The notes beneath the pieces were generated by a model, which was given only the letters and a program-made list of their open reading frames with translations, did no database searches and was not told the origin of the DNA. Position numbers and translations under genes: made by a program. This document shows positions 7,667-57,259 of a stretch of DNA of 64,000 bases, one piece after another (position 1 is the first letter of the stretch; each line of letters begins with the position of its first letter). Location of the stretch: IMG/VR virus record IMGVR_UViG_3300023174_000045, positions 1 to 64,000 of that record. One strand, written 5' to 3'.

Positions 7667-8702
7667 AATCACACAACCTAGAAAAAAATTAGATGAGATA
7701 GACTTTGGTGCTGTCAAAGCACCTGCGGCCCGGGGTGTTGCTGCGGCTGGAGGATTTGCTTCAGCACTGGGCAAGGCCATAACTAATGCACCACTCAAAG
7801 CACTGGGAGCAAAAACTGGCGCTGATTTAGTGCCTGATCCCGATGCGGGCAAAAGCCGCGCATCCGTTGCTGCCAGAATGGATGCAGCAACCAAGGCTGC
7901 CATGCCGGTAATCACTCAACAGGCTGATCAACAACAAAAGATGTGGGCAGCCAGTGTAGCTAACATGATGAAAAAAGCCGGCGTGACCACGATGACCGAG
8001 CTAGATCCTGCTCAACTGCGCGAACCATTGATGAAACAAATTGAGACCATGGGCAAACCTTATGGACTCAGCAACTATAAAAATCTACCCAATGCAGTTG
8101 ACCCAGAAAGTTTTGGCGGTGCAGGCAAAGAAGAAGCCATGAACACAGTCGAAGCCATTGACGCTGCCATTGCGGCAATCCTGAGTCCAGATCCAAAACA
8201 ACAAACCGGTGCTCAAGCAAGAAACAACTGGATCAATTTATCCAAAGAAATTTACGCAGCCGGTCAACAGGCTCAATTTAGAGAGAAAAGTTATGCTTCA
8301 GGTCATGACCTTGCTGCACCTGAAGTTGTGGATGGATTAGCCCAGAGGCTTGACGCTGCTGGGCTGACGGCTGGCAAATTACGCTTGCCATCTGGAGTGG
8401 TTCGCCCCACCGGCGATCCGCGAGTTAACAACTTTTTGTCAGCTCTGGGATTGATTCCCAAAGCAGTCACACCTGCACCTGCGCCAAAGACAGCACCAGT
8501 TGCTGTCCCAGCACCAGTCACAGCTGAAGCGGTTGGTACTGGAATCAATGTGGCAGCGCTGGCACAAAAAGCCGCCAGCGCCAAGCTCACAGCACAAGCA
8601 TTGGGCTTGCCATCAGGCAAAGTGGCGTTGACCAATGATCCCAATATAAATGCTTTGCTTCAGGCAGTTGGCCTTGTTCCAATGCAAGCAGGCGCCAAAT
8701 GA
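7653..8702 (+). CDS. Ala-rich putative internal head protein with duplicated C-terminal module
   Basis: N-terminus MQIFEI...LDE; two copies of an LTAxxLxLPSG...TxDPxxNxxLxAxGL motif. Confidence 0.6.
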   Translation: MQIFEITQPRKKLDEIDFGAVKAPAARGVAAAGGFASALGKAITNAPLKALGAKTGADLVPDPDAGKSRASVAARMDAATKAAMPVITQQADQQQKMWAASVANMMKKAGVTTMTELDPAQLREPLMKQIETMGKPYGLSNYKNLPNAVDPESFGGAGKEEAMNTVEAIDAAIAAILSPDPKQQTGAQARNNWINLSKEIYAAGQQAQFREKSYASGHDLAAPEVVDGLAQRLDAAGLTAGKLRLPSGVVRPTGDPRVNNFLSALGLIPKAVTPAPAPKTAPVAVPAPVTAEAVGTGINVAALAQKAASAKLTAQALGLPSGKVALTNDPNINALLQAVGLVPMQAGAK

Positions 8703-13672: not shown

Positions 13673-14044
13673 ATGGCCTATTCAGAAAAAGTAATTGATC
13701 ACTATGAAAATCCACGCAACGTGGGCAAATTTGAAATCGATGACACCATTGGTACAGGCATGGTAGGAGCACCAGCCTGTGGTGATGTGATGAAATTGCA
13801 AATCAAAGTCGAAAACGGAGTTATAACCGATGCCAGGTTCAAAACATACGGATGCGGAAGTGCCATTGCCTCATCCTCTCTTGTTACCGAGTGGGTTAAA
13901 GGACGAACGCTTGACGAGGCCGCAGCTCTTAAAAATTCAGAGATTGCTCAAGAACTCGCATTGCCACCAGTCAAGATTCATTGTTCTATTCTTGCTGAAG
14001 ATGCTATAAAAGCCGCAGTGGAAGATTATCGAAAGAAACACTAA
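13673..14044 (+). CDS. iscU: Fe-S cluster scaffold protein IscU
   Basis: MAYSEKVIDHYENPRNVG, GAPACGD, GCGSAIASSS, LPPVKIHCS. Confidence 0.95.
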   Translation: MAYSEKVIDHYENPRNVGKFEIDDTIGTGMVGAPACGDVMKLQIKVENGVITDARFKTYGCGSAIASSSLVTEWVKGRTLDEAAALKNSEIAQELALPPVKIHCSILAEDAIKAAVEDYRKKH

Positions 14045-28072: not shown

Positions 28073-28101
28073 TTGACCAATAATTACCAAAATGCTATAA
28101 T
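28073..28101 (+). promoter_or_regulatory. early sigma70 promoter
   Basis: TTGACC-N17-TATAAT; palindrome GTAATACT-TG-AGTATTAC upstream at 28044-28061. Confidence 0.85.
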
Positions 28102-35819: not shown

Positions 35820-36278
35820 ATGACAAAAACTCTAACCCTTCGCAGTTTCGATCTTCCCGCACTTCACAAATTTGGTATTGGTTTTGATAACATGTTTGAT
35901 GAGATCATGCGTGTCAACGCTCAACAAAGCAACAGCAACTATCCACCTTATGACATTGTGCAAATCAACGATGATGAGTACATGATCTCAGTGGCTGTGG
36001 CCGGCTTTGGAGCAGATGACCTCACAGTGACCAAGGACAAGAAAACCTTGATCATTGAAGGCAAGCACAGCCGTGAGACGGTGGACAACGAAGACGCCAC
36101 TGCAAAATATTTGCACAAAGGCATAAGCGAACGCAGTTTCCGTAGAGAGTTTACATTAGCCGACTATGTAGAGATCAGCAATGCTCATCTTGAACTGGGC
36201 ATACTCAGCGTACATTTAAAACGCGAAGTACCCGAACAAGACAAGCCAAAGACCATTGCAATTACCTACAAAGAGTAA
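35820..36278 (+). CDS. small heat shock protein (Hsp20/IbpA family)
   Basis: YPPYDI, VAGF, YLHKGIS.RSF.REF.L, A.L..GIL. Confidence 0.93.
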   Translation: MTKTLTLRSFDLPALHKFGIGFDNMFDEIMRVNAQQSNSNYPPYDIVQINDDEYMISVAVAGFGADDLTVTKDKKTLIIEGKHSRETVDNEDATAKYLHKGISERSFRREFTLADYVEISNAHLELGILSVHLKREVPEQDKPKTIAITYKE

Positions 36279-40839: not shown

Positions 40840-41976
40840 TTAGAAGCGATGTTGGATACCAACTGCCACAGCATTCTGCTTGTATTTGCTGTCGCTGAAA
40901 GTTGATGTGTCCTGGCTGGGAACCCAACGATCATACACAGTAAACGGAGCAGTAGCACCTGATGCACGAGTTGCAACCACATAGTCGGCAAACACTTGTG
41001 TGCGCTTGCTGAAATCATAAGTCACGCCAACAGCAGTCATTTTGACATTGTTAATGCCAGCAGTGACTTTGTCTTTGACCATGTAGTAACCGCCATTTAC
41101 GCCAAGATTGGCATTGACTTTGTACTTGGCGCCAACAAATGTTGTTTCAGCATCAGTCTTGCCATCGGCCTTGGTTGAGCTGGCATAGTAGTTGGTTTGT
41201 GCTGTGGGATTGTCAGTCTTAGCATAGCCTGCATTTACAGTTAATGCAGGCGTAACATCATATTTCACAGCATACAAATCAATCTTTTCACTGATAACTG
41301 AACTGCTCAAACGCACTTCTTCGTGTGTGTATGCCAAGTCCAACGGGCCTGCGGTGTAACGAACACCTACGTTGGTACCAGATTTATAAGCAGTGTCATC
41401 GGGCTGGTTGCCAAATGCTTTGGCGTAGTCAAACTTGAAACCGCTGTAGTCTTTGCTGGACCAGCGAACCATGTTGTCAAAGCGGCTCACACCTGAACCT
41501 GAGTAGAAACCAGCATAACGAGCAATGGGTTTCATACCACCAAAGTTCCAGTTGCCACGGCTATCAAATTCATCTAGCACGTTGTACAAAAAGTTTTTGC
41601 CACGACCCAATTTGACTTCACCAAAGCTGCCGCTGAGGCCCACATTGGCTTCGCGGTCAAACAACACAGTACCATTGGTGCCTGTGCCTGCTGAGTCTTT
41701 GCCAGCAGCGCCAGTGCGCAAACTCATGTTGCCTTCCAATTGGAAATTGGCTTTCAAACCATCACCAAGGTCTTCTGAACCTTTGATACCAAAGCGATTG
41801 CTGTTGTGAGCTTGGTCTGCAACACCAGTGAAATCACTGTTACTGCTGGTAAAGCCACTGCCACTGACAATGCCAGCGCCAACCACACCATACACTTGTG
41901 TGTTGTTTTGTGCTTGAGCAGTGCCAGCAACGCCGACAGCAACCAATGCCGCAATTAAAATATTCTTAAATTTCAT
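40840..41976 (-). CDS. outer-membrane porin (Betaproteobacterial general porin family)
   Basis: Signal peptide; SNRFGIKGSEDLGDGLKANFQLE, LFDREANVGLSG.FG...GR; C-terminal Phe. Confidence 0.9.
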   Translation of the reverse strand: MKFKNILIAALVAVGVAGTAQAQNNTQVYGVVGAGIVSGSGFTSSNSDFTGVADQAHNSNRFGIKGSEDLGDGLKANFQLEGNMSLRTGAAGKDSAGTGTNGTVLFDREANVGLSGSFGEVKLGRGKNFLYNVLDEFDSRGNWNFGGMKPIARYAGFYSGSGVSRFDNMVRWSSKDYSGFKFDYAKAFGNQPDDTAYKSGTNVGVRYTAGPLDLAYTHEEVRLSSSVISEKIDLYAVKYDVTPALTVNAGYAKTDNPTAQTNYYASSTKADGKTDAETTFVGAKYKVNANLGVNGGYYMVKDKVTAGINNVKMTAVGVTYDFSKRTQVFADYVVATRASGATAPFTVYDRWVPSQDTSTFSDSKYKQNAVAVGIQHRF

Positions 41977-42006
41977 AGTTTCTCCTTTGTAAATTACTAT
42001 GGGTTT

Positions 42007-42035
42007 ATTATATAGTATTTCTACTAACAATACAA
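42007..42035 (-). promoter_or_regulatory. sigma70 promoter for porin
   Basis: TTGTAT-N17-TATAAT. Confidence 0.7.
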
Positions 42036-43052
42036 CTATTTCTTGACCTGTGTCCAAACTTCGCTACGAATGCGATCCGTAACAGCTTTTGGCAATGGCA
42101 CATAGTCAAGATCTGCAGCCATTTTACCACCGTTTACAAAACTCCAGTCAAAGAATTTGATGACTTCTTGACCAGTCTTTGCATTTTTGGGTTCACGATA
42201 CATCAGCACAAACACAGCACCTGTGATGGGCCATGATTGCGCACCCTTTTGATTTACCAAACTGATGCCCATGCCCGGAACACTGAACCAATCAGCACCG
42301 GCAGCCGCTGCCGCAAATGTCAGATCATCGGGCTCGACCCATTTGCCGTCGCGATTTTGCAAACGTGCATAGCTGATTTTGTTTTTCTTGGCATAAGCAT
42401 ATTCTACGTAGCCAATGGAATTTTTGATACGTGTTACATTGGCAGCAACACCTTCATTGCCTTTGCCGCCCACACTGCTGGTGGCAGGCCATTTCACAGC
42501 GGCGCCTTTGCCAACTTCGTCTTTCCACAGTGGGCTGACTTCAGTCAAGTAGTCTGTGAAAATAAATGTTGTACCTGACCCATCCGCACGATGCACCACT
42601 GTGATGGGTTCGGCAGGCAATTTAACCTTGGGGTTCAAGTCTTGGATACGCTTGTCGTTCCACGTCACAATGTGTCCCACAAAGATCTTGGCCAGTACTT
42701 CACCGGTCAACTGCAACTCGCCAGGTTTGATGCCTTCTACATTGATGATTGGCACCACGCCGCCCAGCACAGCAGGAAACTGGATCAAGCCAGCGGCTGT
42801 TAATTCATCACCTTTCATGGGTGCATCACTGGCACCAAAATCCACTGTACCTGCTTTGATTTGCTTGATGCCGCCGGAACTACCAATGCTTTGATAGTTT
42901 AGTTGCACATCAGATTTTTCTCTGTAAGCTTCTGACCATTTAGAGAACATGGGAAAGGCAAATGTTGAACCTGCCCCTGTGATTGTTTCTGCATTTGCTT
43001 GTGGACTCATCAAGTACAATGATGCCGCAATTATTACCAAGATTTTTTTCAT
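42036..43052 (-). CDS. pstS: phosphate ABC transporter substrate-binding protein PstS
   Basis: GAGSTF, YQSIGSSGG, DFGASD, RADGSGTT, IGYVE, WPI. Confidence 0.95.
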   Translation of the reverse strand: MKKILVIIAASLYLMSPQANAETITGAGSTFAFPMFSKWSEAYREKSDVQLNYQSIGSSGGIKQIKAGTVDFGASDAPMKGDELTAAGLIQFPAVLGGVVPIINVEGIKPGELQLTGEVLAKIFVGHIVTWNDKRIQDLNPKVKLPAEPITVVHRADGSGTTFIFTDYLTEVSPLWKDEVGKGAAVKWPATSSVGGKGNEGVAANVTRIKNSIGYVEYAYAKKNKISYARLQNRDGKWVEPDDLTFAAAAAGADWFSVPGMGISLVNQKGAQSWPITGAVFVLMYREPKNAKTGQEVIKFFDWSFVNGGKMAADLDYVPLPKAVTDRIRSEVWTQVKK

Positions 43053-43104
43053 GTGTTTGTTCCTTTGTGAATGTGCGATGCACAAATTATTTAAACACAA
43101 AGAT

Positions 43105-45819: not shown

Positions 45820-46315
45820 GTCACATATCCCCAAGTTCTGGGATGATGAATTCAAGGACCTGGTATATGTCAACGAATCATTCAATGACAATGTCAACGT
45901 TGAACGTTGGTTGGCGCAAGGCTATGCCAACAAGTTCACTGGATCCATGTGTGACATGCGGTATCCACAGCCTAGTTGGAATCATTTGTTTGTGAAAATA
46001 TTTGAACAGCAAGGCTGGCAAGACGTGGGTACTAGCTATTATAGAATGAGCACTGGAACAATCCTCCCCACACATCAGGACTTGTATCTGCGTTATATTG
46101 ATGTGTTCAAGTTACACGGACAAGAACAACGCATACGCAGAGCTGTGGTATTCTTGGAAGATTGGCAACCGGGGCATTATGCAGAATACATGAATCGGCC
46201 CTACACAGCTTGGCAAGCAGGCAATGTAGTGGAGTGGCCTTATGACACCCCGCATATGGCAGCCAACCTGGGACCAACTCCAAGATACACACTACAAATA
46301 ACAGGATGGGTATGA
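45797..46315 (+). CDS. 2OG-Fe(II)/cupin-type oxygenase-like protein
   Basis: LPTHQD (HxD) and distal H (PHMAAN), R..LQITG. Confidence 0.65.
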   Translation: MVTHAVVKSHIPKFWDDEFKDLVYVNESFNDNVNVERWLAQGYANKFTGSMCDMRYPQPSWNHLFVKIFEQQGWQDVGTSYYRMSTGTILPTHQDLYLRYIDVFKLHGQEQRIRRAVVFLEDWQPGHYAEYMNRPYTAWQAGNVVEWPYDTPHMAANLGPTPRYTLQITGWV

Positions 46316-47229
46316 TTTCAACATACAACGAGTGGGATCCACTGAAACGAATTGTGGTAGGTCGAGCAGACACGGCCAATTGGCCCATCAACGATCCTGT
46401 GTTCAAGAACGAGGGCGATAAAACCACTTGGAAAGAAACACCTGTGCCGTCAGGACCTGTAGACCAATGGATCATTGACGAAGCCAACGAAGACCTTGAA
46501 ATATTGACTCAAACTTTGCAAGGTCTAGGTGTAGTAGTCGAACGTCCAGATCCTTGTCTAAACTTTCAAACACATGACGGACTCAGTGCCTACTGCCCCC
46601 GAGACCGCTTGTTGGTGTATGGTTCAACCATTGTGAACCCTGTGATGATGTACCCTTGCCGGGACATGGAAGCACAGTGCTACTATGACATCATTGATGA
46701 AGCTGAACACTATTTGCACATGCCCAGACACGAAGGCATGGTGCTGGAAGCAGCCAATGTGTGCAGACTCAATGACTCATGGTTGGTGCTGGAGAGCTCA
46801 GGATGCAACGCCGCTGCCTTGGCCTGGCTACGTGTGCAGTTTCCAGATGTCAAGATAGAATCTTGCAATTTCTATGCTGGCGTACATATTGATTCAACCA
46901 TTGTACCCATACGTGAAGGGCTTGTGCTGTTAAATGGTACTAGAGTAAATGAATCCAACTGTCCCAAAGTATTTGAGAACTGGGACAAGATCTATGTGGA
47001 TGATGTTGTGGCACAAGGATTCCACAATTATCCATATGCATCAAAATGGGTGGGCATGAACATGCTGGCTGTGAGTCCCGATACTGTGATCATGGATCGG
47101 AACCAAACCAACCTAATTGCCCAGCTAGAACAACGAAACTTCACAGTGATTCCGTTGGAATTGCGCCACAGTCGCACCTTGGGTGGAGGTTTTCACTGTG
47201 TTACCTTGGATTTGGTGCGATCAAATTAG
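46306..47229 (+). CDS. amidinotransferase (glycine/inosamine-phosphate amidinotransferase family)
   Basis: NEWDPL, CPRD, HIDST, N(M)L.VSP, RTLGGGFHC(V)T. Confidence 0.88.
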   Translation: MGMISTYNEWDPLKRIVVGRADTANWPINDPVFKNEGDKTTWKETPVPSGPVDQWIIDEANEDLEILTQTLQGLGVVVERPDPCLNFQTHDGLSAYCPRDRLLVYGSTIVNPVMMYPCRDMEAQCYYDIIDEAEHYLHMPRHEGMVLEAANVCRLNDSWLVLESSGCNAAALAWLRVQFPDVKIESCNFYAGVHIDSTIVPIREGLVLLNGTRVNESNCPKVFENWDKIYVDDVVAQGFHNYPYASKWVGMNMLAVSPDTVIMDRNQTNLIAQLEQRNFTVIPLELRHSRTLGGGFHCVTLDLVRSN

Positions 47230-47264: not shown

Positions 47265-48293
47265 ATGAACACACCTCGAATTGGCTTTTGTTGCAAATGG
47301 CTCAATGACCCCAGTGAAACTGGCGGCATGAAGGTCAATGCAAAGGACCGTGACTTAAACGGCAGATCAACCACCATGCGATGGCTGCGAGAACACGCAG
47401 ATGAAGCCGAGCAACGTCAGTGGGACATTATGAACCACAATGCTGCCGCGGCTGTACGACTGATTGAACGTGTGGGCACACTGCCACCTGAACGGCGCAT
47501 GGTACGTCTGGGTAGCGAAATGCTACAAGGCTACACTGAACCAAGCTGGATTGACTGGTGGCAACGACCAGAGATCCAAGAACACTGTGCAAAGATCTTT
47601 GCTCCTGTAGGTGAAGCCGCAAGACGACTGGGTGTGCGTATATCTTTCCATCCCGGACAGTTCTGTGTACTGGCCAGTGAGTCAGATGAAATTGTTCAAC
47701 GCAGTATTTTAGAATTTGAATATCATGTGGACATGGCTCGTTGGATGGGCTTTGGTGCTGGCTGGCATGATCATGGTTTTAAAATTAATGTGCATTTGTC
47801 AGGCAAAGGCGGGCCTGCCAAGTTCCTACGCACTCTGGGCAAACTTACCCCAGAAGCAAGGAACTTAATCGCTATTGAGAATGATGAGATAAGCAATGGT
47901 TTGGACGTTACTCTTGCTGTGGCTGATAGTGTGGCTCTTACTCTGGATATTCATCACCATTGGATCAACACCGGAGAATATATTCAACCCATGGATCCAC
48001 GTGCTCAACGGGTTGTTGAGTCTTGGCGTGGTGTGCGCCCTGTTTGTCACTACAGTGTTAGCCGTGAAGATGTTGTTATGGGACACAGTACCTTTGTTAG
48101 ACCCGACTTATCAGCACTACTCAGTCAAGGTTACAAGAAACAAAAGCTAAGAGCACATTCTGATTTTATGTGGAACACTGCTGTGAATGACTGGGCTTTG
48201 CAATTTGCTGGTCAGTGGGACATACAGGTCGAAGCCAAAGGCAAAAATCTTGCCAGCGAAATGTTATACAACCAATGGAAAGCCAATGCCTGA
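47265..48293 (+). CDS. uvsE: UV-damage endonuclease
   Basis: RIGFCC, RLGS, SFHPGQF, IENDE, LDIHHH, HYS, RAHSD, VEAKGK. Confidence 0.92.
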   Translation: MNTPRIGFCCKWLNDPSETGGMKVNAKDRDLNGRSTTMRWLREHADEAEQRQWDIMNHNAAAAVRLIERVGTLPPERRMVRLGSEMLQGYTEPSWIDWWQRPEIQEHCAKIFAPVGEAARRLGVRISFHPGQFCVLASESDEIVQRSILEFEYHVDMARWMGFGAGWHDHGFKINVHLSGKGGPAKFLRTLGKLTPEARNLIAIENDEISNGLDVTLAVADSVALTLDIHHHWINTGEYIQPMDPRAQRVVESWRGVRPVCHYSVSREDVVMGHSTFVRPDLSALLSQGYKKQKLRAHSDFMWNTAVNDWALQFAGQWDIQVEAKGKNLASEMLYNQWKANA

Positions 48294-48576
48294 TATTTTA
48301 ACTGGAATTTTTAAATGGATACAAGATGATTATCGCACTAATCGCTTTAGGTTTGTTGTTGAGCTCTTGGCTTGGTCTATCAGTATTGGCTGCTCAATTA
48401 CCATGGCACTCACCGTACCAACCCCTCCTCTTTTGTACATGTATCCTGTGTGGATCAGTGGTTGTGCCATGTATGCTTGGGCTGCCTACTCTCGAAAGAG
48501 TTTTGGCATGCTGGCCAACTATATCTTGTTGACAACAATAGATTCAGTTGGCCTAGCCCGGATGCTGTTAAACTGA
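48286..48576 (+). CDS. small multi-pass membrane protein
   Basis: Three hydrophobic segments. Confidence 0.7.
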   Translation: MPDILTGIFKWIQDDYRTNRFRFVVELLAWSISIGCSITMALTVPTPPLLYMYPVWISGCAMYAWAAYSRKSFGMLANYILLTTIDSVGLARMLLN

Positions 48577-48909
48577 TTTCTTTTTGGCAGGTGCTTTTTT
48601 AGCGGCAGCTGGTTTGGCTGCCGTTTTCTTGGCAGCTGGCTTTTTAGCAGGTGCTTGTTCCACAACTGGTGCAGGTGCTTCTACACGATTTTCACTGCCT
48701 GTAGGCTCTGCGGGTGCCACTGGTGCAACATCGGCAACTTTGACGTGAATTTTGCCCTCACCGACTTCACCGCCGGGAAATGGCCAAGAAGTTTTTGGCT
48801 TGGTTGCGGCGTCCAAAGGATGTGACCCATCAGACTTTTCTTTGTTCATGGTTTGGTATGCCCAATATCCTGCAACGCCCAAAACTGCAATAATGATGAT
48901 AATTTCCAT
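48568..48909 (-). CDS. membrane-anchored protein with Lys/Ala/Pro histone-H1-like tail
   Basis: N-terminal TM; PAKKPAAKKTAAKPAAAKKAPAKKK. Confidence 0.75.
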   Translation of the reverse strand: MEIIIIIAVLGVAGYWAYQTMNKEKSDGSHPLDAATKPKTSWPFPGGEVGEGKIHVKVADVAPVAPAEPTGSENRVEAPAPVVEQAPAKKPAAKKTAAKPAAAKKAPAKKKSV

Positions 48910-48966
48910 TGTAAATCTCCTATGAAATATTTAGTAGTCATTTACTAAAAAAGAATAAAAAAAATG

Positions 48967-48995
48967 TTGCACTGCCAGGTAAATAATGCTACAAT
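48967..48995 (+). promoter_or_regulatory. sigma70 promoter with embedded TAAATA for phasin-like pair
   Basis: TTGCAC-N17-TACAAT; TAAATA at 48980-48985. Confidence 0.7.
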
Positions 48996-49059
48996 AGATC
49001 AACAAGATGCCGCATGGGGCGGGTCTTGTATCTAGTAACTCGCTGTCAAGGAGAACACG

Positions 49060-49365
49060 GTGATCAAGCAAGCAAGTCTAACCATAGACACAATACAAAA
49101 TGGTAAAAAACAGTTTATCGACAAGTACATTGACAATCCAATCTTGAACAAAGCCTGGCACAATTTTGTGGCCAAACAAACGGCTTTTTGTCAAGCCGCA
49201 CTGGAAACTCAATTGGAAATGGTTTCTGAAGTCAGCAAAACGCTGATGGACACCAAAGTACGCAAATTGGTAAACCCATTCAACATTGACTGGTTCGATG
49301 CTGGCTGGGAAGCACTGGTTCAACAAAGCATAGCCGAAACAAACAAGGAGAAAAAACATGTTTAA
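49060..49365 (+). CDS. phasin-like helical protein
   Basis: IDTIQNGKKQFI...FVAKQTAF pattern, paralogous to next ORF; SD AAGGAG. Confidence 0.5.
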   Translation: MIKQASLTIDTIQNGKKQFIDKYIDNPILNKAWHNFVAKQTAFCQAALETQLEMVSEVSKTLMDTKVRKLVNPFNIDWFDAGWEALVQQSIAETNKEKKHV

Positions 49366-49621
49366 TTCTGTAATCGACACTGTGCAAACTGCACAAAAAA
49401 CTTTCATCAATACCGTTGTCACCAACGAAGAAATCGCCAAGCCCATGATCCGCATGATCGATGCACAAAGCGAAACTGCCAAATTGACTGCCAAGGCCAT
49501 TTTGGACATCACCACCACCATGGCATCGGCCACCACTGAAAAAGTGCAGGAAGCAATGAAGTTCGACTTCACCAAATTTGCTGACACATTCAAGCCAGCA
49601 ACTGCCACTGCCAAAAAGTAA
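49358..49621 (+). CDS. phasin-like helical protein
   Basis: IDTVQTAQKTFI...MIDAQSETAK; amphipathic helix; SD AAGGAG. Confidence 0.55.
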   Translation: MFNSVIDTVQTAQKTFINTVVTNEEIAKPMIRMIDAQSETAKLTAKAILDITTTMASATTEKVQEAMKFDFTKFADTFKPATATAKK

Positions 49622-49642: not shown

Positions 49643-49666
49643 AACCCTGCTGAGTGCAGGGTTTTT
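49643..49666 (+). terminator. intrinsic terminator
   Basis: AACCCTGC/GCAGGGTT plus T-run. Confidence 0.75.
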
Positions 49667-49667
49667 C

Positions 49668-49696
49668 TTGACCAGAATTTGCCGATCTGCTATAAT
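49668..49696 (+). promoter_or_regulatory. early sigma70 promoter
   Basis: TTGACC-N17-TATAAT. Confidence 0.85.
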
Positions 49697-49978: not shown

Positions 49979-50128
49979 ATGAAAACACTCAGCTTCACTC
50001 TACAACTTCCTCGCCAGCGCCGTCGTGCGGTGGAGTTGTACAGCCGTGACACTCCGTTCAAGCCAAAAGTTGAACGGTCAAAGACAGTGTACAACCGCAA
50101 AGCCAAACATCGGAACCGTGATGAATAA
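49979..50128 (+). CDS. 49-aa basic peptide, ArfA-like (not in ORF track)
   Basis: MKTLSFTLQLPRQRRRAVELYSRDTPFKPKVERSKTVYNRKAKHRNRDE; leaderless. Confidence 0.55.
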   Translation: MKTLSFTLQLPRQRRRAVELYSRDTPFKPKVERSKTVYNRKAKHRNRDE

Positions 50129-50369
50129 ACTTTTAGCAGTGTTATTGACTGTGACTGTGGTTGGCTGTGCAAGTCAACCATATCGTCCACCCCTGGACAT
50201 CAGTACAATACCCAATGACTGCGGCAACAGAAATTCTATCACGGCCTGGCTGGAACGTCAGGCCGCCATCCCACCACAACCCATGGAATCCAATGAAGAC
50301 TACACAAGAAGTCGTGGACAAATTCGCTCGCGTATTTGGAGTCTGCGTTATACTTGTCAGCCTGTGTAG
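50121..50369 (+). CDS. small lipoprotein
   Basis: MNKLLAVLLTVTVVG-C lipobox. Confidence 0.7.
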   Translation: MNKLLAVLLTVTVVGCASQPYRPPLDISTIPNDCGNRNSITAWLERQAAIPPQPMESNEDYTRSRGQIRSRIWSLRYTCQPV

Positions 50370-50595
50370 CGGATGTGCCACAGGTACACCAGCGGCGCGG
50401 CCTATGCTGGCTGAGGATCTCAATCATTTTCAAGTCGATTGTCGAATCAAAGATCAACAACGAGCTTTTTTAGAAAGCATGCGACTCACTCGAGAGGATG
50501 TGTTTTTTAACCGGATGAATGTTTTTGAAGAAAAATACGGAGACGTTAATTCAAAAGTCAACTTCTATTTGTTTCACCTGAGGTACTGCCCATGA
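50293..50595 (+). CDS. small lipoprotein
   Basis: ...VILVSLCSG-C lipobox. Confidence 0.55.
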   Translation: MKTTQEVVDKFARVFGVCVILVSLCSGCATGTPAARPMLAEDLNHFQVDCRIKDQQRAFLESMRLTREDVFFNRMNVFEEKYGDVNSKVNFYLFHLRYCP

Positions 50596-51152
50596 AAAGA
50601 TTACTAGCCCTTGCACTTATTCCTGCCACTGTGCTGGCCGGTGAATGTGTGCTACAAGATCGCACAGTGAGTCGTTCAGCTGTGACCATCTCAGAACGTA
50701 GCAAGATCACACCTGAGGTTGTGCCCAGCATCAACAACGGCAAGACATGCATGGTGTCATTCCGTGTGCGCATTGGCTCAGACTGGCACAGTGCGCATGG
50801 CGAATATGAGTGGGCAGGTGACCGTCCCCGAGAAGAAGCCTGTGCTGTGGCGGTGAGTCGTGCCGAAGATGAAGTACGTGCTCGAGTGGGTCGAACTCAA
50901 ACTGTGAGTGAAAAGACCATGATATGCAGTGATCGTCCAGACTTGGATGCATTGCGTAGCACCAATCCAGGAACCATTGCTGAACTGCATCAGTTCAGAC
51001 CGCATCCAGACTTCCCTCGAGAATTTTGGCACAATGGTGCACCTTGTAGATATTTTTTGGACAGTGCATACATTCGGACGGATGTGCGTACCTTTCAAGG
51101 AGTGATTTGCAAAGTACACGACTCAAAATGGGTTGTGGTGGATAAATGGTAG
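50592..51152 (+). CDS. secreted Cys-containing protein
   Basis: Signal peptide MKRLLALALIPATVLA; paired Cys. Confidence 0.7.
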   Translation: MKRLLALALIPATVLAGECVLQDRTVSRSAVTISERSKITPEVVPSINNGKTCMVSFRVRIGSDWHSAHGEYEWAGDRPREEACAVAVSRAEDEVRARVGRTQTVSEKTMICSDRPDLDALRSTNPGTIAELHQFRPHPDFPREFWHNGAPCRYFLDSAYIRTDVRTFQGVICKVHDSKWVVVDKW

Positions 51153-51181
51153 TTGACCAATTATTCACTTTGTGTTAAACT
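51153..51181 (+). promoter_or_regulatory. sigma70 promoter
   Basis: TTGACC-N17-TAAACT. Confidence 0.75.
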
Positions 51182-51212
51182 TGTGTTATTGTAAACTGTT
51201 CAAAGGAACATC

Positions 51213-51923
51213 ATGAAAAAAGTATTTGCGATTTTGCCCTTGGTAGCGCTTGTGGCGTGTAGTTCAATCAAGCCTGCACCTATTGGCCAGGCCCCAGTAG
51301 TCAGTGCTCCGGTGGTATTGCCCACAGAGCAATACGACAATCGTGTGGCAGTGGCACAGGTCAATCGGGAAGCACAGGTCAATCAATCTATCACACAGGC
51401 TCCTGCGTGGATGACCAAATTGCCAGAAAGCAATTCAGCAGTCTACGCCAATGGCTCGGCAGTGAGCTCAGACATGAGCATGGCTGACTACAAGGCCAAG
51501 TTATTTGCATTTGGCAAGATCTGTATGGCAGCCGGTGGTAAGGTCAGTCAGCAGGCCAAAGTGTTCATGCAAGACACCACAGAAGCCAGCATGGAAATTT
51601 CTGAATTGGCCATCAAGTCAATGTGTCCAAGTGTAGACATCACAGGTGTGGAAATCAAAGAGATCAAACGCATTGCTGAGGGCGGTAGATTCCGCAGTTA
51701 TGCATTGGTTGTATTGCCCACAGGCGACGCCAATGTACTGCAACGCCGCAAAGATGTGCTCAAGCTGAAAGATCGTGCTGATCAACGCAGTGTAGAGGTG
51801 TTCAAAGAAATGGACAAGAATGCTGAGCCAGCGCCGGTAAAAACCACACCAAGTGTGCAGTTGTATCCTGACACAATTTCCTCCCCAGGAGAACGTGTTG
51901 TGATCAAGGAAACGCTGAACTAA
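51213..51923 (+). CDS. lipoprotein (LPP20-like)
   Basis: LVALVA-C lipobox; QAPAWM...YANG...D.SMA..KA. Confidence 0.65.
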   Translation: MKKVFAILPLVALVACSSIKPAPIGQAPVVSAPVVLPTEQYDNRVAVAQVNREAQVNQSITQAPAWMTKLPESNSAVYANGSAVSSDMSMADYKAKLFAFGKICMAAGGKVSQQAKVFMQDTTEASMEISELAIKSMCPSVDITGVEIKEIKRIAEGGRFRSYALVVLPTGDANVLQRRKDVLKLKDRADQRSVEVFKEMDKNAEPAPVKTTPSVQLYPDTISSPGERVVIKETLN

Positions 51924-51973: not shown

Positions 51974-52543
51974 ATGAACACAGAAAACGAAACAATCCAA
52001 ACTCACAGCCAGGCTCTGCAAGAAAATGGCATGTATGTTTTCATGGGCGAAGTCAACAACGAAAACATCGCACCCATTGTGGAATGGATCTTGCACGAAA
52101 ACTTTGTGGTCAAAAAGAAACGCAAAGAATTGCTGTTGATGATTTGCTCGGAAGGTGGTGACATGGGTGCTGCCTTTGCCCTGATAGATGTCATGCGTAG
52201 CAGTCTCATACCTGTCAAAACAGTGGGGCTAGGCATGATAGCCAGCGCAGGCCTGTTGATCTTTATTTCTGGCACTCCAGGACGCAGGGTGCTCACACCC
52301 AATACGTCAATACTGAGCCATCAATTCTCCTGGAGCAATGAAGGCAAGGCACATGAACTGTTTGCCACCATGCGAGAGTTTGAACTCACCCAACAACGCA
52401 TGTTGGCGCACTATCAACTGTGTACAGGATTATCGGAAGATGAAATTAGGAAGAACTTGTTGCCACCACATGACATTTGGCTATCGGCAATAGAAGCCAT
52501 GGGTCTCAAAGTGTGTGACCACATTTCAGAACTTGTACGTTAA
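51974..52543 (+). CDS. divergent ClpP-family protease subunit
   Basis: ICSEGG, GMIASAG (catalytic Ser), SHQ (His), D.WLSA.EA. Confidence 0.8.
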   Translation: MNTENETIQTHSQALQENGMYVFMGEVNNENIAPIVEWILHENFVVKKKRKELLLMICSEGGDMGAAFALIDVMRSSLIPVKTVGLGMIASAGLLIFISGTPGRRVLTPNTSILSHQFSWSNEGKAHELFATMREFELTQQRMLAHYQLCTGLSEDEIRKNLLPPHDIWLSAIEAMGLKVCDHISELVR

Positions 52544-54141: not shown

Positions 54142-54192
54142 TGGTGTTTTCCAAGAATTATGCTATACTTATGCAATCAACAAGGAGACCCT

Positions 54193-54777
54193 GTGCCAAA
54201 TTTAGTACCCATAGTTTTAGAACACACCATGAAAGGTGAACGCAGTTACGATATCTACAGCAGATTATTACGAGATAGAGTGATCATCATGGACGGCGAA
54301 GTCAACTCAGCTACCAGCAGTTTGATCACTGCACAGTTGTTGTTTTTAGAGGCAGACAATCCGGACAAAGCCATCAGCTTGTACATCAACAGTCCGGGCG
54401 GCAGTGTCACAGCAGGCATGGCCATTTACGACACCATGAACTTTATCAAACCAGACATTCACACCATTGTGATGGGACAGGCTGCTTCGATGGGTAGCCT
54501 ATTGGCCACAGCAGGTACCAAGGGGCATCGTTACATACTGCCCAATGCCCGACACATGATTCACCAACCCTTGGGCGGAGCATCAGGACAGGCCACTGAT
54601 GTGGAAATTCAAGCCCGAGAACTGTTGCGTTGGAAAAAGGTATTGACTGATATCTATGTACAGCATACCGGCCGGGACTTTGAAACCCTGCGCACTGACA
54701 TGGAACGTGACAACTTCATGACTGCACAGGAAGCAGTTGACTATGGCCTAGCCGACAAGGTCATAGACAAACGTTAA
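54193..54777 (+). CDS. clpP: ATP-dependent Clp protease proteolytic subunit
   Basis: DIYSRLL.DR, YINSPGG, GQAASMG, MIHQP, RDNFM...EA.DYG; GTG start with SD AAGGAG. Confidence 0.95.
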
Positions 54778-57009: not shown

Positions 57010-57234
57010 ATGAATCTCAAAGTCAAAGCAGCCGCAATCGTAGCAGGTATTCTTGCATTTACTATTGTTGCACAAGGTGTGATTGCAGTGGCCGCAGAAA
57101 CATACGGGGGTCAGGCAGTTGTTAATACTTTTGTAGGCGGTATACTTTTGTTTTTGATCTATCAAATGTATACTATGGTATTAGCAACTTTGGAACGCAA
57201 CAAAGAAATTGAAAAATTGGCAAAAAAGGATTGA
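57010..57234 (+). CDS. small two-TM membrane protein
   Basis: Two hydrophobic helices; SD AAGG. Confidence 0.7.
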   Translation: MNLKVKAAAIVAGILAFTIVAQGVIAVAAETYGGQAVVNTFVGGILLFLIYQMYTMVLATLERNKEIEKLAKKD

Positions 57235-57259
57235 CCAGAAATTGCCCAAATGCTATAAT
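57231..57259 (+). promoter_or_regulatory. early sigma70 promoter
   Basis: TTGACC-N17-TATAAT. Confidence 0.85.

What the first reader, a model, noticed from the sequence alone, without database searches (positions are those of the whole stretch)
48568..49621. Tandem phasin-like genes divergent from a membrane-anchored AAKP-tail protein: possible PHA-granule hijacking unit
Seen: two paralogous helical proteins (IDT.Q..K.FI...F/M...Q) with a dual early/late promoter, 5' hairpin and terminator. Opposite them is a TM protein with a PAAKK/AAKP tail. Established: phasins coat polyhydroxyalkanoate granules; Pseudomonas PhaF and Ralstonia PhaM use Ala/Lys/Pro tails to tether granules to DNA; PHA accumulates under P limitation. 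Inference: the phage remodels or mobilises host carbon granules, complementing the P module. The phasin assignment rests on pattern similarity only.
Basis: inference. Interest (0 to 1): 0.62.

Follow-up and report, generated by a model that had tools for sequence, protein, structure and literature searches.

The report
Phage-encoded mini-phasin-like operon
An uncultured freshwater giant phage carries two small helical proteins that are faint but reproducible relatives of bacterial phasins (the coat proteins of bioplastic storage granules), next to an anchored protein with a histone-like tail; this hints, but does not prove, that the phage acts on its host's storage granules.

Summary
ORF1 (49060-49365) and ORF2 (49358-49621) are translationally coupled paralogues; ORF2 is modelled as helical with good confidence, ORF1 only weakly. 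They lie behind a conserved sigma-70-type promoter that contains a TAAATA box. A 5' stem-loop is supported by covariation (120/120 cells paired, 6 of 10 pairs with compensatory changes). A terminator follows. The divergent gene (48568-48909, minus strand) has an N-terminal TM helix and a Lys/Ala/Pro tail.

The phasin reading is partly supported. No curated model (Pfam, NCBIfam) is passed, Foldseek finds nothing, and the phage record holds no PHA enzymes. However:
- ORF2 belongs to a family of at least 136 clusters found only in uncultured phage contigs, and 16 of 64 members give sub-threshold Phasin_2 hits.
- The family profile, run over 151 bacterial genomes, gave 38 weak hits; 17 lie in frame on genuine Phasin_2 genes, all in one register.
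- hhalign against short phasins gives 74% probability (reversed control 0.6%).
- A phasin HMM ranks ORF2 first among 2,695 frames of the phage genome.
- PhaP (5IP0) superposes at 1.6 Å over 68 residues.

Most likely this is a shortened, phage-specific phasin-like coat protein. Granule binding, the tail's ligand and the host are untested.

The parts
48568..48909 (-). Anchor-plus-tail protein, 113 aa. It has an N-terminal hydrophobic helix (residues 3-18), a conserved central GKIHVK..DVAP...RVE block, and a C-terminal Lys/Ala/Pro tail ending KKAPAKKKSV.
   Evidence: ORF and translation. Alignment with relatives, A7. A divergent K/A/P-tail neighbour is present in 12 of 15 loci, including distant ones. 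Composition. Only sub-threshold low-complexity hits to HC2 and H1-like models.
48927..48934 (-). CTAAATAT box 17 nt upstream of the tail gene's start codon: a late-type promoter candidate.
   Evidence: Sequence. The box is conserved in relatives. TAAATAT is 10.9x enriched upstream of genes. Listed among 34 gene-proximal boxes.
48967..48995 (+). Promoter of the ORF1-ORF2 operon: -35 TTGCAC (48967-48972), TG at 48987-48988, -10 TACAAT (48990-48995), with an embedded GTAAATAA box (48979-48986).
   Evidence: The promoter was found by the 29-31-nt pattern in 13 of the 15 loci that reach the region; in the other two (L135, L137) the TAAATA box and TACAAT are present but the full pattern did not match. 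The embedded TAAATA box is absent from the genome's other TTGACC-type promoters.
49002..49029 (+). 5'UTR stem-loop: an outer 6-bp stem and an inner 4-bp stem. It is followed by a conserved single-stranded stretch and the AAGGAG ribosome-binding site.
   Evidence: Alignment A8. 120/120 cells paired and 6 of 10 pairs with compensatory changes. Not thermodynamically unusual on its own (z +1.1). Rfam gives only sub-threshold ROSE_3, 24 vs 43 bits.
49060..49365 (+). ORF1, 101 aa: a divergent second paralogue of the mini-phasin-like family. It is present only in the window's sub-lineage.
   Evidence: Absent from L003-L007 and L009-L013.
49358..49621 (+). ORF2, 87 aa: the conserved core member of the mini-phasin-like family. 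An amphipathic helical hairpin with an aromatic/Lys C-terminal segment.
49643..49669 (+). Intrinsic terminator: 8-bp perfect stem, 5-nt loop, T-rich tail. The next TTGACC-N17-TATAAT promoter starts at 49668.

Best explanation
ORF2, and its lineage-specific duplicate ORF1, belong to a phage-borne family of about 90-aa amphipathic helical-hairpin proteins. The family is a shortened, very divergent relative of the bacterial Phasin_2 domain. It corresponds to roughly positions 37-100 of that domain and shares the core signature AK.l...I(D/E).QT.Y(A/T)K.A.

The operon is built for strong expression. It has a sigma-70-type promoter with an extended -10 that also contains the phage's TAAATA-type box, a covarying 5' stem-loop (probably an mRNA stabiliser or operator), strong ribosome-binding sites, translational coupling and a terminator.

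The most likely role is that of a phasin. The protein would coat a hydrophobic storage inclusion of the infected cell (polyhydroxyalkanoate granules), displacing or supplementing host phasins, so that the carbon and energy store is kept dispersed or made accessible while the phage replicates under phosphate limitation.

The divergently transcribed neighbour is anchored by an N-terminal TM helix (an amphipathic helix in some relatives). It exposes a cytoplasmic Lys/Ala/Pro polycation that binds a polyanion: DNA, RNA or polyphosphate.

Shown: gene structure, paralogy, regulatory elements, conservation, and a faint but specific Phasin_2 similarity.
Inferred: homology rather than convergence, granule binding, expression timing, tail ligand, and any cooperation of the two proteins.
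For: Family and paralogy:
- 136 clusters at 50% identity, all small proteins. All contigs examined look phage-derived, up to 697 kb.
- ORF1 is linked to the family at hhalign probability 97.7%.

Phasin signal:
- PF09361 is the only recurrent Pfam family: 16 of 64 members, 13-17 bits, mostly protein 12-71 against profile 33-95.
- The family profile run over 401 Pseudomonadota genomes gave one hit at E<=1e-3, and it is a genuine Phasin_2 gene.
- Over 151 genomes at E<=1, 17 of 38 hits lie in frame on Phasin_2 genes with a constant offset of about 23 positions. My estimate of the chance expectation is about 0.002 hits.
- hhalign against 24 short phasins: probability 74%, E 2.7e-5; reversed control 0.6%.
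- HMM alignments show the shared I(D/E).QT.Y(A/T)K motif.
- A short-phasin HMM ranks ORF2 1st and ORF1 4th of 2,695 frames in the phage genome. In relatives' loci the nine family genes are the nine top hits of 752 frames.
- Family members score a mean 9.4 bits against a phasin HMM, versus 5.9 reversed and 1.5 shuffled.
- Nearest named embedding clusters are Phasin_2, PHB_acc and PHA_synth_III_E.
- Amphipathicity of ORF2 (mean hydrophobic moment 0.33, z 3.3) is close to real short phasins at 0.36-0.37.

Expression:
- Regulatory elements.
- Contigs in RNA libraries lie on ORF1/ORF2.

Context:
- PstS-like and porin genes lie in the window.
- PhaF and PhaM use basic repeat tails to tie granules to DNA (PMC5658603).
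Against: - The window's own ORF1 and ORF2 reach no curated threshold in Pfam, NCBIfam or PHROGs.
- The best family members stay below PF09361's 24.9-bit cut-off.
- hhalign against Cupriavidus PhaP2-type phasins gives probability 0.3%. Against all 39 phasins it gives 14-47%.
- Reversed family sequences still reach up to 16 bits, so amphipathic composition explains part of the signal.
- No PHA synthase, depolymerase, PhaR or PhaF-type phasin domain is in the phage record, which is about 65% complete.
- The host is unknown.
- No cultured phage carries the family.
- The RNA-library contigs do not prove transcription.
Confidence: 0.4

Rival explanations
1. True descent from phasins but a different job. 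The helical hairpin has been exapted, for example as a chaperone-like anti-aggregation factor (some phasins have such activity), as a coat for membranes or another hydrophobic surface, or as an abundant scaffold in phage development. It would not act on PHA granules.
For: - The protein lacks about the first third of the Phasin_2 domain (register).
- No pha genes are in the record.
- The family is a positionally fixed, core-like gene between UvdE and ClpP in very divergent relatives. That is more typical of a phage-cycle function than of a host-specific accessory gene.
- The phage also carries Hsp20 and two ClpP-like genes, i.e. a proteostasis theme.
Against: - There is no positive evidence for any other target.
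- The nearest embedding clusters are all PHA-granule proteins.
- Amphipathicity is like that of real phasins.
Confidence: 0.25
2. No homology. ORF1 and ORF2 are generic amphipathic helical hairpins whose resemblance to Phasin_2 is convergent or compositional. They would be small host-takeover or regulatory proteins of unknown target.
For: - Every phasin score is sub-threshold.
- Reversed sequences score up to 16 bits.
- Family members also give scattered weak hits to Perilipin, REF, Mistic and Senescence.
- Designed helical bundles top the PDB sequence search.
- The genes have a strong sigma-70-type promoter like many small genes of this genome.
Against: - Composition alone does not explain why 17 of 38 genome-wide hits land in frame, in one register, on Phasin_2 genes.
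- It does not explain the shared ordered motif.
- It does not explain the 74% vs 0.6% forward/reversed contrast.
- It does not explain the reciprocal top ranks.
Confidence: 0.25
3. The two sides of the divergent promoter region are not a functional unit. The anchored Lys/Ala/Pro-tail protein acts on its own. It might tether nucleoid or phage DNA to the membrane, or bind polyphosphate granules (as the H1-like AlgP does) or RNA (as reported for PhaF's disordered tail). Its adjacency to the phasin-like gene would simply reflect conserved synteny.
For: - The whole UvdE-to-ClpP block is syntenic, not just the pair.
- In L136 a 538-aa gene and another small gene separate the two.
- The tail protein evolves much faster (34-58% identity) than ORF2 (78-92%).
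- The fold test of the pair gave no support, which is not evidence against binding.
- AlgP associates with polyP granules (PMC9239181) and PhaF binds RNA (PMC12818456), both found.
- A phosphate-uptake module lies nearby.
Against: - The divergent pairing survives down to 39-48% ORF2 identity (L135, L137), even where the anchor changes from a TM helix to an amphipathic helix.
- PhaF and PhaM set a precedent for a phasin plus a basic tail working together.
Confidence: 0.35

Closest known systems
Phasin_2 (PF09361) short phasins of about 110 aa, as in alphaproteobacterial-type PhaP (examples taken from genomes: L118, L100, L123)
   Same: - Small, all-helical, amphipathic.
- Shared ordered motif AKs(l/v).k.I(E/D).QT(D/E)Y(A/T)K.A in the long helix.
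- Reciprocal best profile matches.
- Comparable hydrophobic moment.
   Different: - 85-100 aa instead of about 110-190 aa.
- No equivalent of about the first 36 domain positions.
- Different N-terminus (MF..D..ID.VQ..KK) and an aromatic KFD..KF C-terminus.
- Below every curated cut-off.
- Phage-encoded, with no pha gene neighbourhood.
PhaP of Aeromonas hydrophila, crystal structure 5IP0
   Same: Helical hairpin. The AF2 model of ORF2 superposes at rmsd 1.6 Å over 68 residues, on chain residues 39-109.
PhaF/PhaI of Pseudomonas (PF05597 phasin domain; PhaF adds an AAKP-repeat histone-like tail)
   Same: A phasin-like module and a Lys/Ala/Pro polycationic tail are encoded side by side. PhaF's tail binds DNA non-specifically and helps granule segregation (PMC5658603).
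   Different: - Here the two modules are on separate, divergently transcribed genes.
- The tail protein's N-terminus is a TM or amphipathic anchor, not a phasin domain.
- PF05597 does not match ORF1 or ORF2.
PhaM of Ralstonia eutropha
   Same: Lys/Ala/Pro-rich basic C-terminus. PhaM attaches PHB granules to the nucleoid (PMC5658603).
   Different: No detectable sequence relationship beyond low-complexity composition. PhaM is soluble and binds PhaC, whereas the phage protein is membrane-anchored.
AlgP and other bacterial histone H1-like proteins (HC2, NF038053)
   Same: KPAA/AAKK-type repeats. Sub-threshold matches of the tail to HC2 (20 bits) and the Burkholderia H1-like model (18 bits). AlgP associates with polyphosphate granules (PMC9239181).
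   Different: Far below the cut-offs (40 and 80 bits). The tail is short (about 30 aa) and attached to a membrane anchor.

Membership tests
Phasin_2 (PF09361) | Score at or above Pfam's gathering cut-off (24.9 bits) | tested here: not met
   ORF1 and ORF2 give no hit at E<=1, and six-frame search of the whole phage genome gives none at E<=10. Distant family members reach 13-17 bits in the 20 scanned singly; the best E among all 64 is 1.6e-4.
Phasin_2 (PF09361) | Reciprocal profile similarity to genuine members, in one consistent register | tested here: met
   - Phage-family profile: the single hit in 401 genomes is a Phasin_2 gene.
- 17 of 38 hits in 151 genomes lie on Phasin_2 genes, in frame, at a constant offset.
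- Phasin HMM: ORF2 ranks 1 and ORF1 ranks 4 of 2,695 frames; 9 of 9 top ranks in relatives.
- Individual E-values are weak (0.006-3.5).
Phasin_2 (PF09361) | Profile-profile homology probability at a level usually accepted (above 90-95%) | tested here: inconclusive
   hhalign gives 74% against 24 short phasins, 47% and 14% against all 39, 0.3% against the Cupriavidus PhaP2 group, and 0.6% against the reversed control.
Phasins in general | Small amphipathic alpha-helical protein | tested here: met
   AF2 model has helices 2-20 and 24-67, pLDDT 82. Mean hydrophobic moment is 0.33 (z 3.3 against shuffles), versus 0.36-0.37 in real short phasins. ORF1 is helical but less amphipathic.
Phasins in general | Binds PHA granules in vivo or in vitro | not testable with these tools
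   Needs localisation or binding experiments.
Phasins in general | Occurs with PHA metabolism (phaC, phaZ, phaR) in the same genome or host | tested here: not met
   PF07167, PF06850, PF10503 and PF05233 are absent from the phage record, which is about 65% complete. The host is not identified.
NCBIfam phasin models (NCBIfam release 20.0; e.g. TIGR01841, the model that names Cupriavidus PhaP2) | Score above the curated cut-off | tested here: not met
   No NCBIfam family at E<=10 for ORF1 or ORF2.
PhaF/PhaI-type phasin (PF05597) | PF05597 domain; in PhaF it is fused to the AAKP tail | tested here: not met
   No match on ORF1, ORF2 or the tail protein. The only hit in the genome is 12.6 bits elsewhere, at 7845-8021. 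Tail and helical module are separate genes.
PhaF/PhaM/AlgP-type histone H1-like tail | Tandem Lys/Ala/Pro-rich basic repeats at the C-terminus | tested here: met
   The last 45 aa hold 10 K, 13 A and 7 P. The tail is conserved in relatives as KKAPAKKKS(V/T). The curated H1-like models stay below their cut-offs.
PhaF/PhaM/AlgP-type histone H1-like tail | Binds DNA (or polyP/RNA) | not testable with these tools
   Needs EMSA or polyP-binding assays.
ROSE_3 RNA thermometer (RF02523) | Score above Rfam's gathering score (43 bits) | tested here: not met
   24 bits, E 0.024, over 49001-49065.

The most novel reading that the evidence does not exclude
A widespread clade of uncultured freshwater giant phages carries a dedicated storage-granule takeover module. 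It consists of an abundantly expressed minimal phasin that re-coats the host's PHA granules, and an anchored histone-like polycation that ties granules (or polyphosphate or the nucleoid) to the membrane. Together with phage PstS and porin genes, the module would let the phage draw on the carbon and phosphorus reserves that P-starved hosts accumulate. This would be the first viral phasin and a new class of auxiliary gene aimed at bacterial inclusions.
Probability: 0.2. Interest if true: 0.8.

Novelty: new variant of a known kind. Interest (0 to 1): 0.58.

Why it matters
Phasins are known as bacterial and archaeal granule coat proteins. Two full-text searches for phage-encoded phasins or for phage effects on PHB granules found nothing relevant. 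No cultured phage in a 50,697-record collection matched either ORF2 or a canonical short phasin.

If the family really binds PHA granules, it would show that viruses manipulate bacterial carbon-storage inclusions, which would add a new target to the list of viral auxiliary functions. It would also provide a naturally minimised phasin of about 85 aa, of possible use as a granule tag. And it would link phage infection to carbon and phosphorus storage dynamics in lakes and rivers, where the family turns up in many metagenomes.

Independently of the function, the conserved promoter, stem-loop and leader are a clean example of a covarying phage 5'UTR element.

Tried and rejected
- Direct family scans of ORF1, ORF2 and the tail protein (Pfam, PHROGs, NCBIfam) gave no usable hit.
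- Foldseek against PDB and the shape search of the ESM Atlas returned only generic helical matches.
- PDB sequence search with the family profile found only designed helical bundles.
- hhalign against a narrow Cupriavidus PhaP2 alignment gave probability 0.3%. That set was too narrow, and the signal is with short phasins.
- PHROG scan of 64 family members found no recurrent family.
- tblastn of ORF2 and of a genuine short phasin against cultured phages gave no match.
- The family profile run on four cultured phages sharing NrdA or UvdE similarity (RSP15, BUDD, IME-SM1, JA29) found nothing.
- Complex prediction of ORF2 with the tail protein's residues 20-85 gave no support (score 0.00). This is not evidence against binding.
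- Host inference failed. NrdA is nearest to Xanthomonas, Ralstonia and Stenotrophomonas phages at 55-59%. The porin is only about 30-35% identical to Burkholderiales porins. There is no Gp23 match and no tRNA in the window. I therefore do not call the phage T4-like or name a host.
- RNA libraries: only assembled contigs were available, so neither expression level nor transcript ends could be read. The roughly 1000x depth at 48540-48673 is cross-matching of AAKK-coding low complexity from other organisms.
- The single-sequence fold of the 5'UTR is not unusually stable; only the comparative test supports the hairpin.
- The antisense 178-aa ORF 49078-49614 (-) was considered and rejected. It has no ribosome-binding site, and all homologues are called and conserved in the + frame.
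- No alternative genetic code was used.
Full report
**Setting**

The window is the first 64 kb of a single 225,080-bp viral contig. CheckV rates it about 65% complete, and its GC content is 44.8%. Near-identical DNA occurs in lake, river and other freshwater metagenomes from many studies. The window also holds:
- NrdA, nearest at 55-59% to Xanthomonas, Ralstonia and Stenotrophomonas phages;
- a UvdE endonuclease;
- a Porin_4 porin and a PstS-like protein, plus a UDP-glucose dehydrogenase and ClpP-like proteases;
- Hsp20 and NifU-like genes, and virion or tail-like genes.

No Gp23-type capsid match was found, so I do not assign the phage to a named group or host.

**Check of the observation**

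Three genes sit as described.
- ORF1: 49060-49365, GTG start, 101 aa.
- ORF2: 49358-49621, 87 aa. It overlaps ORF1 by 8 nt (ATGTTTAA), which indicates translational coupling. Both genes have AAGGAG ribosome-binding sites.
- Tail gene: 48568-48909 on the minus strand, 113 aa.

The two plus-strand proteins share IDT.Q...K.FI. Pairwise BLASTP is weak (E 3e-4 over 18 residues), and a profile of close ORF2 relatives gives only 61%. A profile of the wider family links them firmly: hhalign 97.7%, E 2e-12, 54 columns. That profile finds exactly these two places in the whole genome. ORF2 folds with good confidence into a helical hairpin (pLDDT 82, helices 2-20 and 24-67). ORF1 is all-helical at low confidence (pLDDT 66).

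**Regulatory elements**

Upstream lies TTGCAC-N17-TACAAT with a TG extended -10 (48967-48995). Its spacer contains GTAAATAA. Alignment with relatives shows promoter, box and leader conserved, even in contigs whose ORF2 homologue is only 39-48% identical (L135-L137).

The genome has about 20 stronger TTGACC-N17-TATAAT promoters, none of which carries the box. Conversely, TAAATA-containing 7-mers are the most enriched words upstream of genes (11-15x). They precede 34 genes, including virion and tail-like ones. A dual early-type plus late-type promoter is therefore a reasonable reading, but the timing is inferred. The minus-strand gene has its own CTAAATAT box 17 nt from its start.

The leader forms a stem-loop at 49002-49029. 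Across 12 distinct sequences all 120 pair cells are standard pairs and 6 of 10 pairs show changes on both sides, whereas slid controls pair at 26-55%. On its own the fold is not unusually stable. Rfam gives only a sub-threshold ROSE_3 match (24 vs 43 bits). A clean terminator follows ORF2 (49643-49663).

Contigs assembled from freshwater RNA libraries lie on ORF1/ORF2. One carries the ORF1-less arrangement of relatives. Contigs cannot show transcript level or ends.

**Family and synteny**

The word search found 134 close ORF2 relatives of 85-87 aa, but only five for ORF1. Pfam, PHROGs and NCBIfam left the protein open, so I used the exhaustive representative search. It found 136 clusters at 50% identity, all small proteins without names, on contigs of up to 697 kb.

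The gene keeps its place between UvdE and ClpP in all contigs examined. Within the close clade it is conserved about as well as its neighbours, at 78-92%.

ORF1 exists only in the window's sub-lineage (window, L001, L002, L008, L014). It was inserted between the conserved leader and ORF2.

**Is it a phasin?**

At curated thresholds, no. Several tests nevertheless converge on Phasin_2.

1. Scanning 64 diverse family members against Pfam, the only recurrent family is Phasin_2. It hits 16 members at 13-17 bits, mostly protein 12-71 against profile 33-95.

2. I collected 39 genuine Phasin_2 proteins from bacterial genomes.
   - hhalign of the phage family gives 0.3% against a narrow Cupriavidus PhaP2 set, 14-47% against all 39, and 74% (E 2.7e-5) against the 24 short ones. 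The reversed control gives 0.6%.
   - The aligned core is AK.l...I(D/E).QT.Y(A/T)K.A.

3. The phage-family profile was run over 401 Pseudomonadota genomes.
   - It gave one hit at E<=1e-3, which is a Phasin_2 gene.
   - Over 151 genomes at E<=1 it gave 38 hits. By my cross-check against, 17 lie on Phasin_2 genes, on the same strand, in frame, with a constant offset of about 23 positions.
   - Phasin_2 domains make up roughly 4e-5 of the sequence searched, so about 0.002 such hits would be expected by chance.

4. In the reverse direction, a short-phasin HMM ranks ORF2 first and ORF1 fourth among 2,695 open frames of the phage genome. It also ranks the nine family genes as the nine best of 752 frames in relatives' loci.

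5. Family members score a mean 9.4 bits against a phasin HMM, versus 5.9 when reversed and 1.5 when shuffled.

6. A protein-language-model search puts Phasin_2, PHB_acc and PHA_synth_III_E as the nearest named clusters. The scores are 0.84-0.87, which the tool rates as leads only.

8. ORF2's hydrophobic moment matches that of real short phasins.

I conclude that the family is probably (about 0.65) a shortened, very divergent branch of Phasin_2-like proteins. It is not a member by any curated test. Convergence of amphipathic helices is not excluded.

**The divergent neighbour**

Its homologues keep three features: the N-terminal hydrophobic helix, a central GKIHVK..DVAP...RVE block, and the terminal KKAPAKKKS(V/T). 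A divergent Lys/Ala/Pro-tail protein accompanies the phasin-like gene in 12 of 15 loci by a strict filter, and tblastn finds it in the other three.

In the most distant contigs the anchor is either a TM helix (L137) or a short amphipathic helix (L135, L136). The tail and an APYKVE motif persist.

With only 'ME' before the helix and Lys residues after it, the positive-inside rule puts the tail in the cytoplasm; this is my inference. The H1-like models match only as low complexity, below their cut-offs.

Precedents for such tails:
- PhaF and PhaM, which bind DNA and granules (PMC5658603);
- AlgP on polyphosphate granules (PMC9239181);
- PhaF as an RNA-binding translation activator (PMC12818456).

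A fold test of ORF2 with the tail protein's middle part gave no support, which is neither for nor against binding.

**What argues against the granule story**

- The record holds no PHA synthase, depolymerase, PhaR or PF05597 phasin.
- The host is unknown.
- No cultured phage carries the family.
- Two literature searches found no description of phage phasins.
- The fixed, core-like position of the gene would also suit a role in the phage cycle itself.

**Verdict**

- Observation: confirmed.
- Interpretation: partly supported.
- Most likely explanation (about 0.4): a strongly expressed phage mini-phasin that coats a hydrophobic host inclusion, with a neighbouring anchored polycation whose ligand is open.
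- Rivals: an exapted phasin fold with another role (about 0.25); mere convergence (about 0.25); and, cutting across these, the two genes not being a functional unit (about 0.35).
- Novelty: a new variant of a known kind. The interest is moderate to high because a simple localisation experiment could decide it.

Read laying was given 4,001 letters. No alternative genetic code was used. Nothing needed referral.

Noticed in passing
window 40840-43100 (-): Phosphate-acquisition pair: a Porin_4-type Gram-negative porin (40840-42057) overlapping a PstS-like PBP_like_2 protein (42036-43100). The porin is only about 30-35% identical to Burkholderiales porins.
   Followed up: partly
whole genome, e.g. 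window 28073-28101, 57231-57259; genome 70260, 70820, 71345, 178664: At least a dozen near-identical promoter-plus-leader cassettes (TTGACCAATAATTGCCAAAATGCTATAAT followed by ATGGACATATTGTAACAAAAGGAG) lie in front of small genes. This is a repeated early-type expression cassette.
   Followed up: no
window 35820-36278 and 13673-14044: Hsp20 small heat-shock protein (PHROG E 8e-40) and a NifU-like Fe-S assembly protein (E 2e-43), each preceded by a TAAATA box.
   Followed up: no
window 51974-52543 and 54160-54777: Two ClpP-like protease genes about 1.6 kb apart, on either side of an unannotated 533-aa minus-strand gene. The second has a strong Pfam match; the first is identified through its homologues in related contigs.
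   Followed up: no
window 50118-51923: Three consecutive ORFs with lipoprotein or signal-peptide-like N-termini (lipobox-like ...VGC, ...LAGEC, ...VAC). They are conserved in relatives and match no family.
   Followed up: no
window 48286-48576 (+): A small protein, apparently with three hydrophobic helices, overlaps the UvdE stop and converges on the tail gene with a 9-nt overlap. It is 75-92% conserved in relatives and matches no family.
   Followed up: partly
L003:3394-3828 (-) and the homologue in L009: In these relatives the tail protein carries a Cys-rich insert (CGCG...C..LHKLTAEEW) between the conserved core and the basic tail. It may be a small metal-binding module.
   Followed up: no
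window 49001-49065 (+): A sub-threshold Rfam match to the ROSE_3 RNA thermometer (24 vs 43 bits, E 0.024) covers the whole 5'UTR of the operon.
   Followed up: partly
window 48540-48673: In three of the four RNA libraries laid the summed contig depth jumps to about 1000x (80x in the fourth) over the AAKK-coding stretch only. The contigs run on into unlike sequence, so this is cross-matching of basic-repeat genes from other organisms, not phage expression.
   Followed up: yes
window 49029/49352 (RNA-library run X18): One contig joins 49029 to 49352 with 27 other letters between. This is the ORF1-less leader of related phages, showing both operon forms co-occur in freshwater samples.
   Followed up: yes
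window 46306-47229 (+): A 307-aa protein with a weak C-terminal arginine-deiminase/amidinotransferase-like match (Pfam E 0.05; PHROG 25854 E 4e-26) is conserved next to UvdE in relatives.
   Followed up: no
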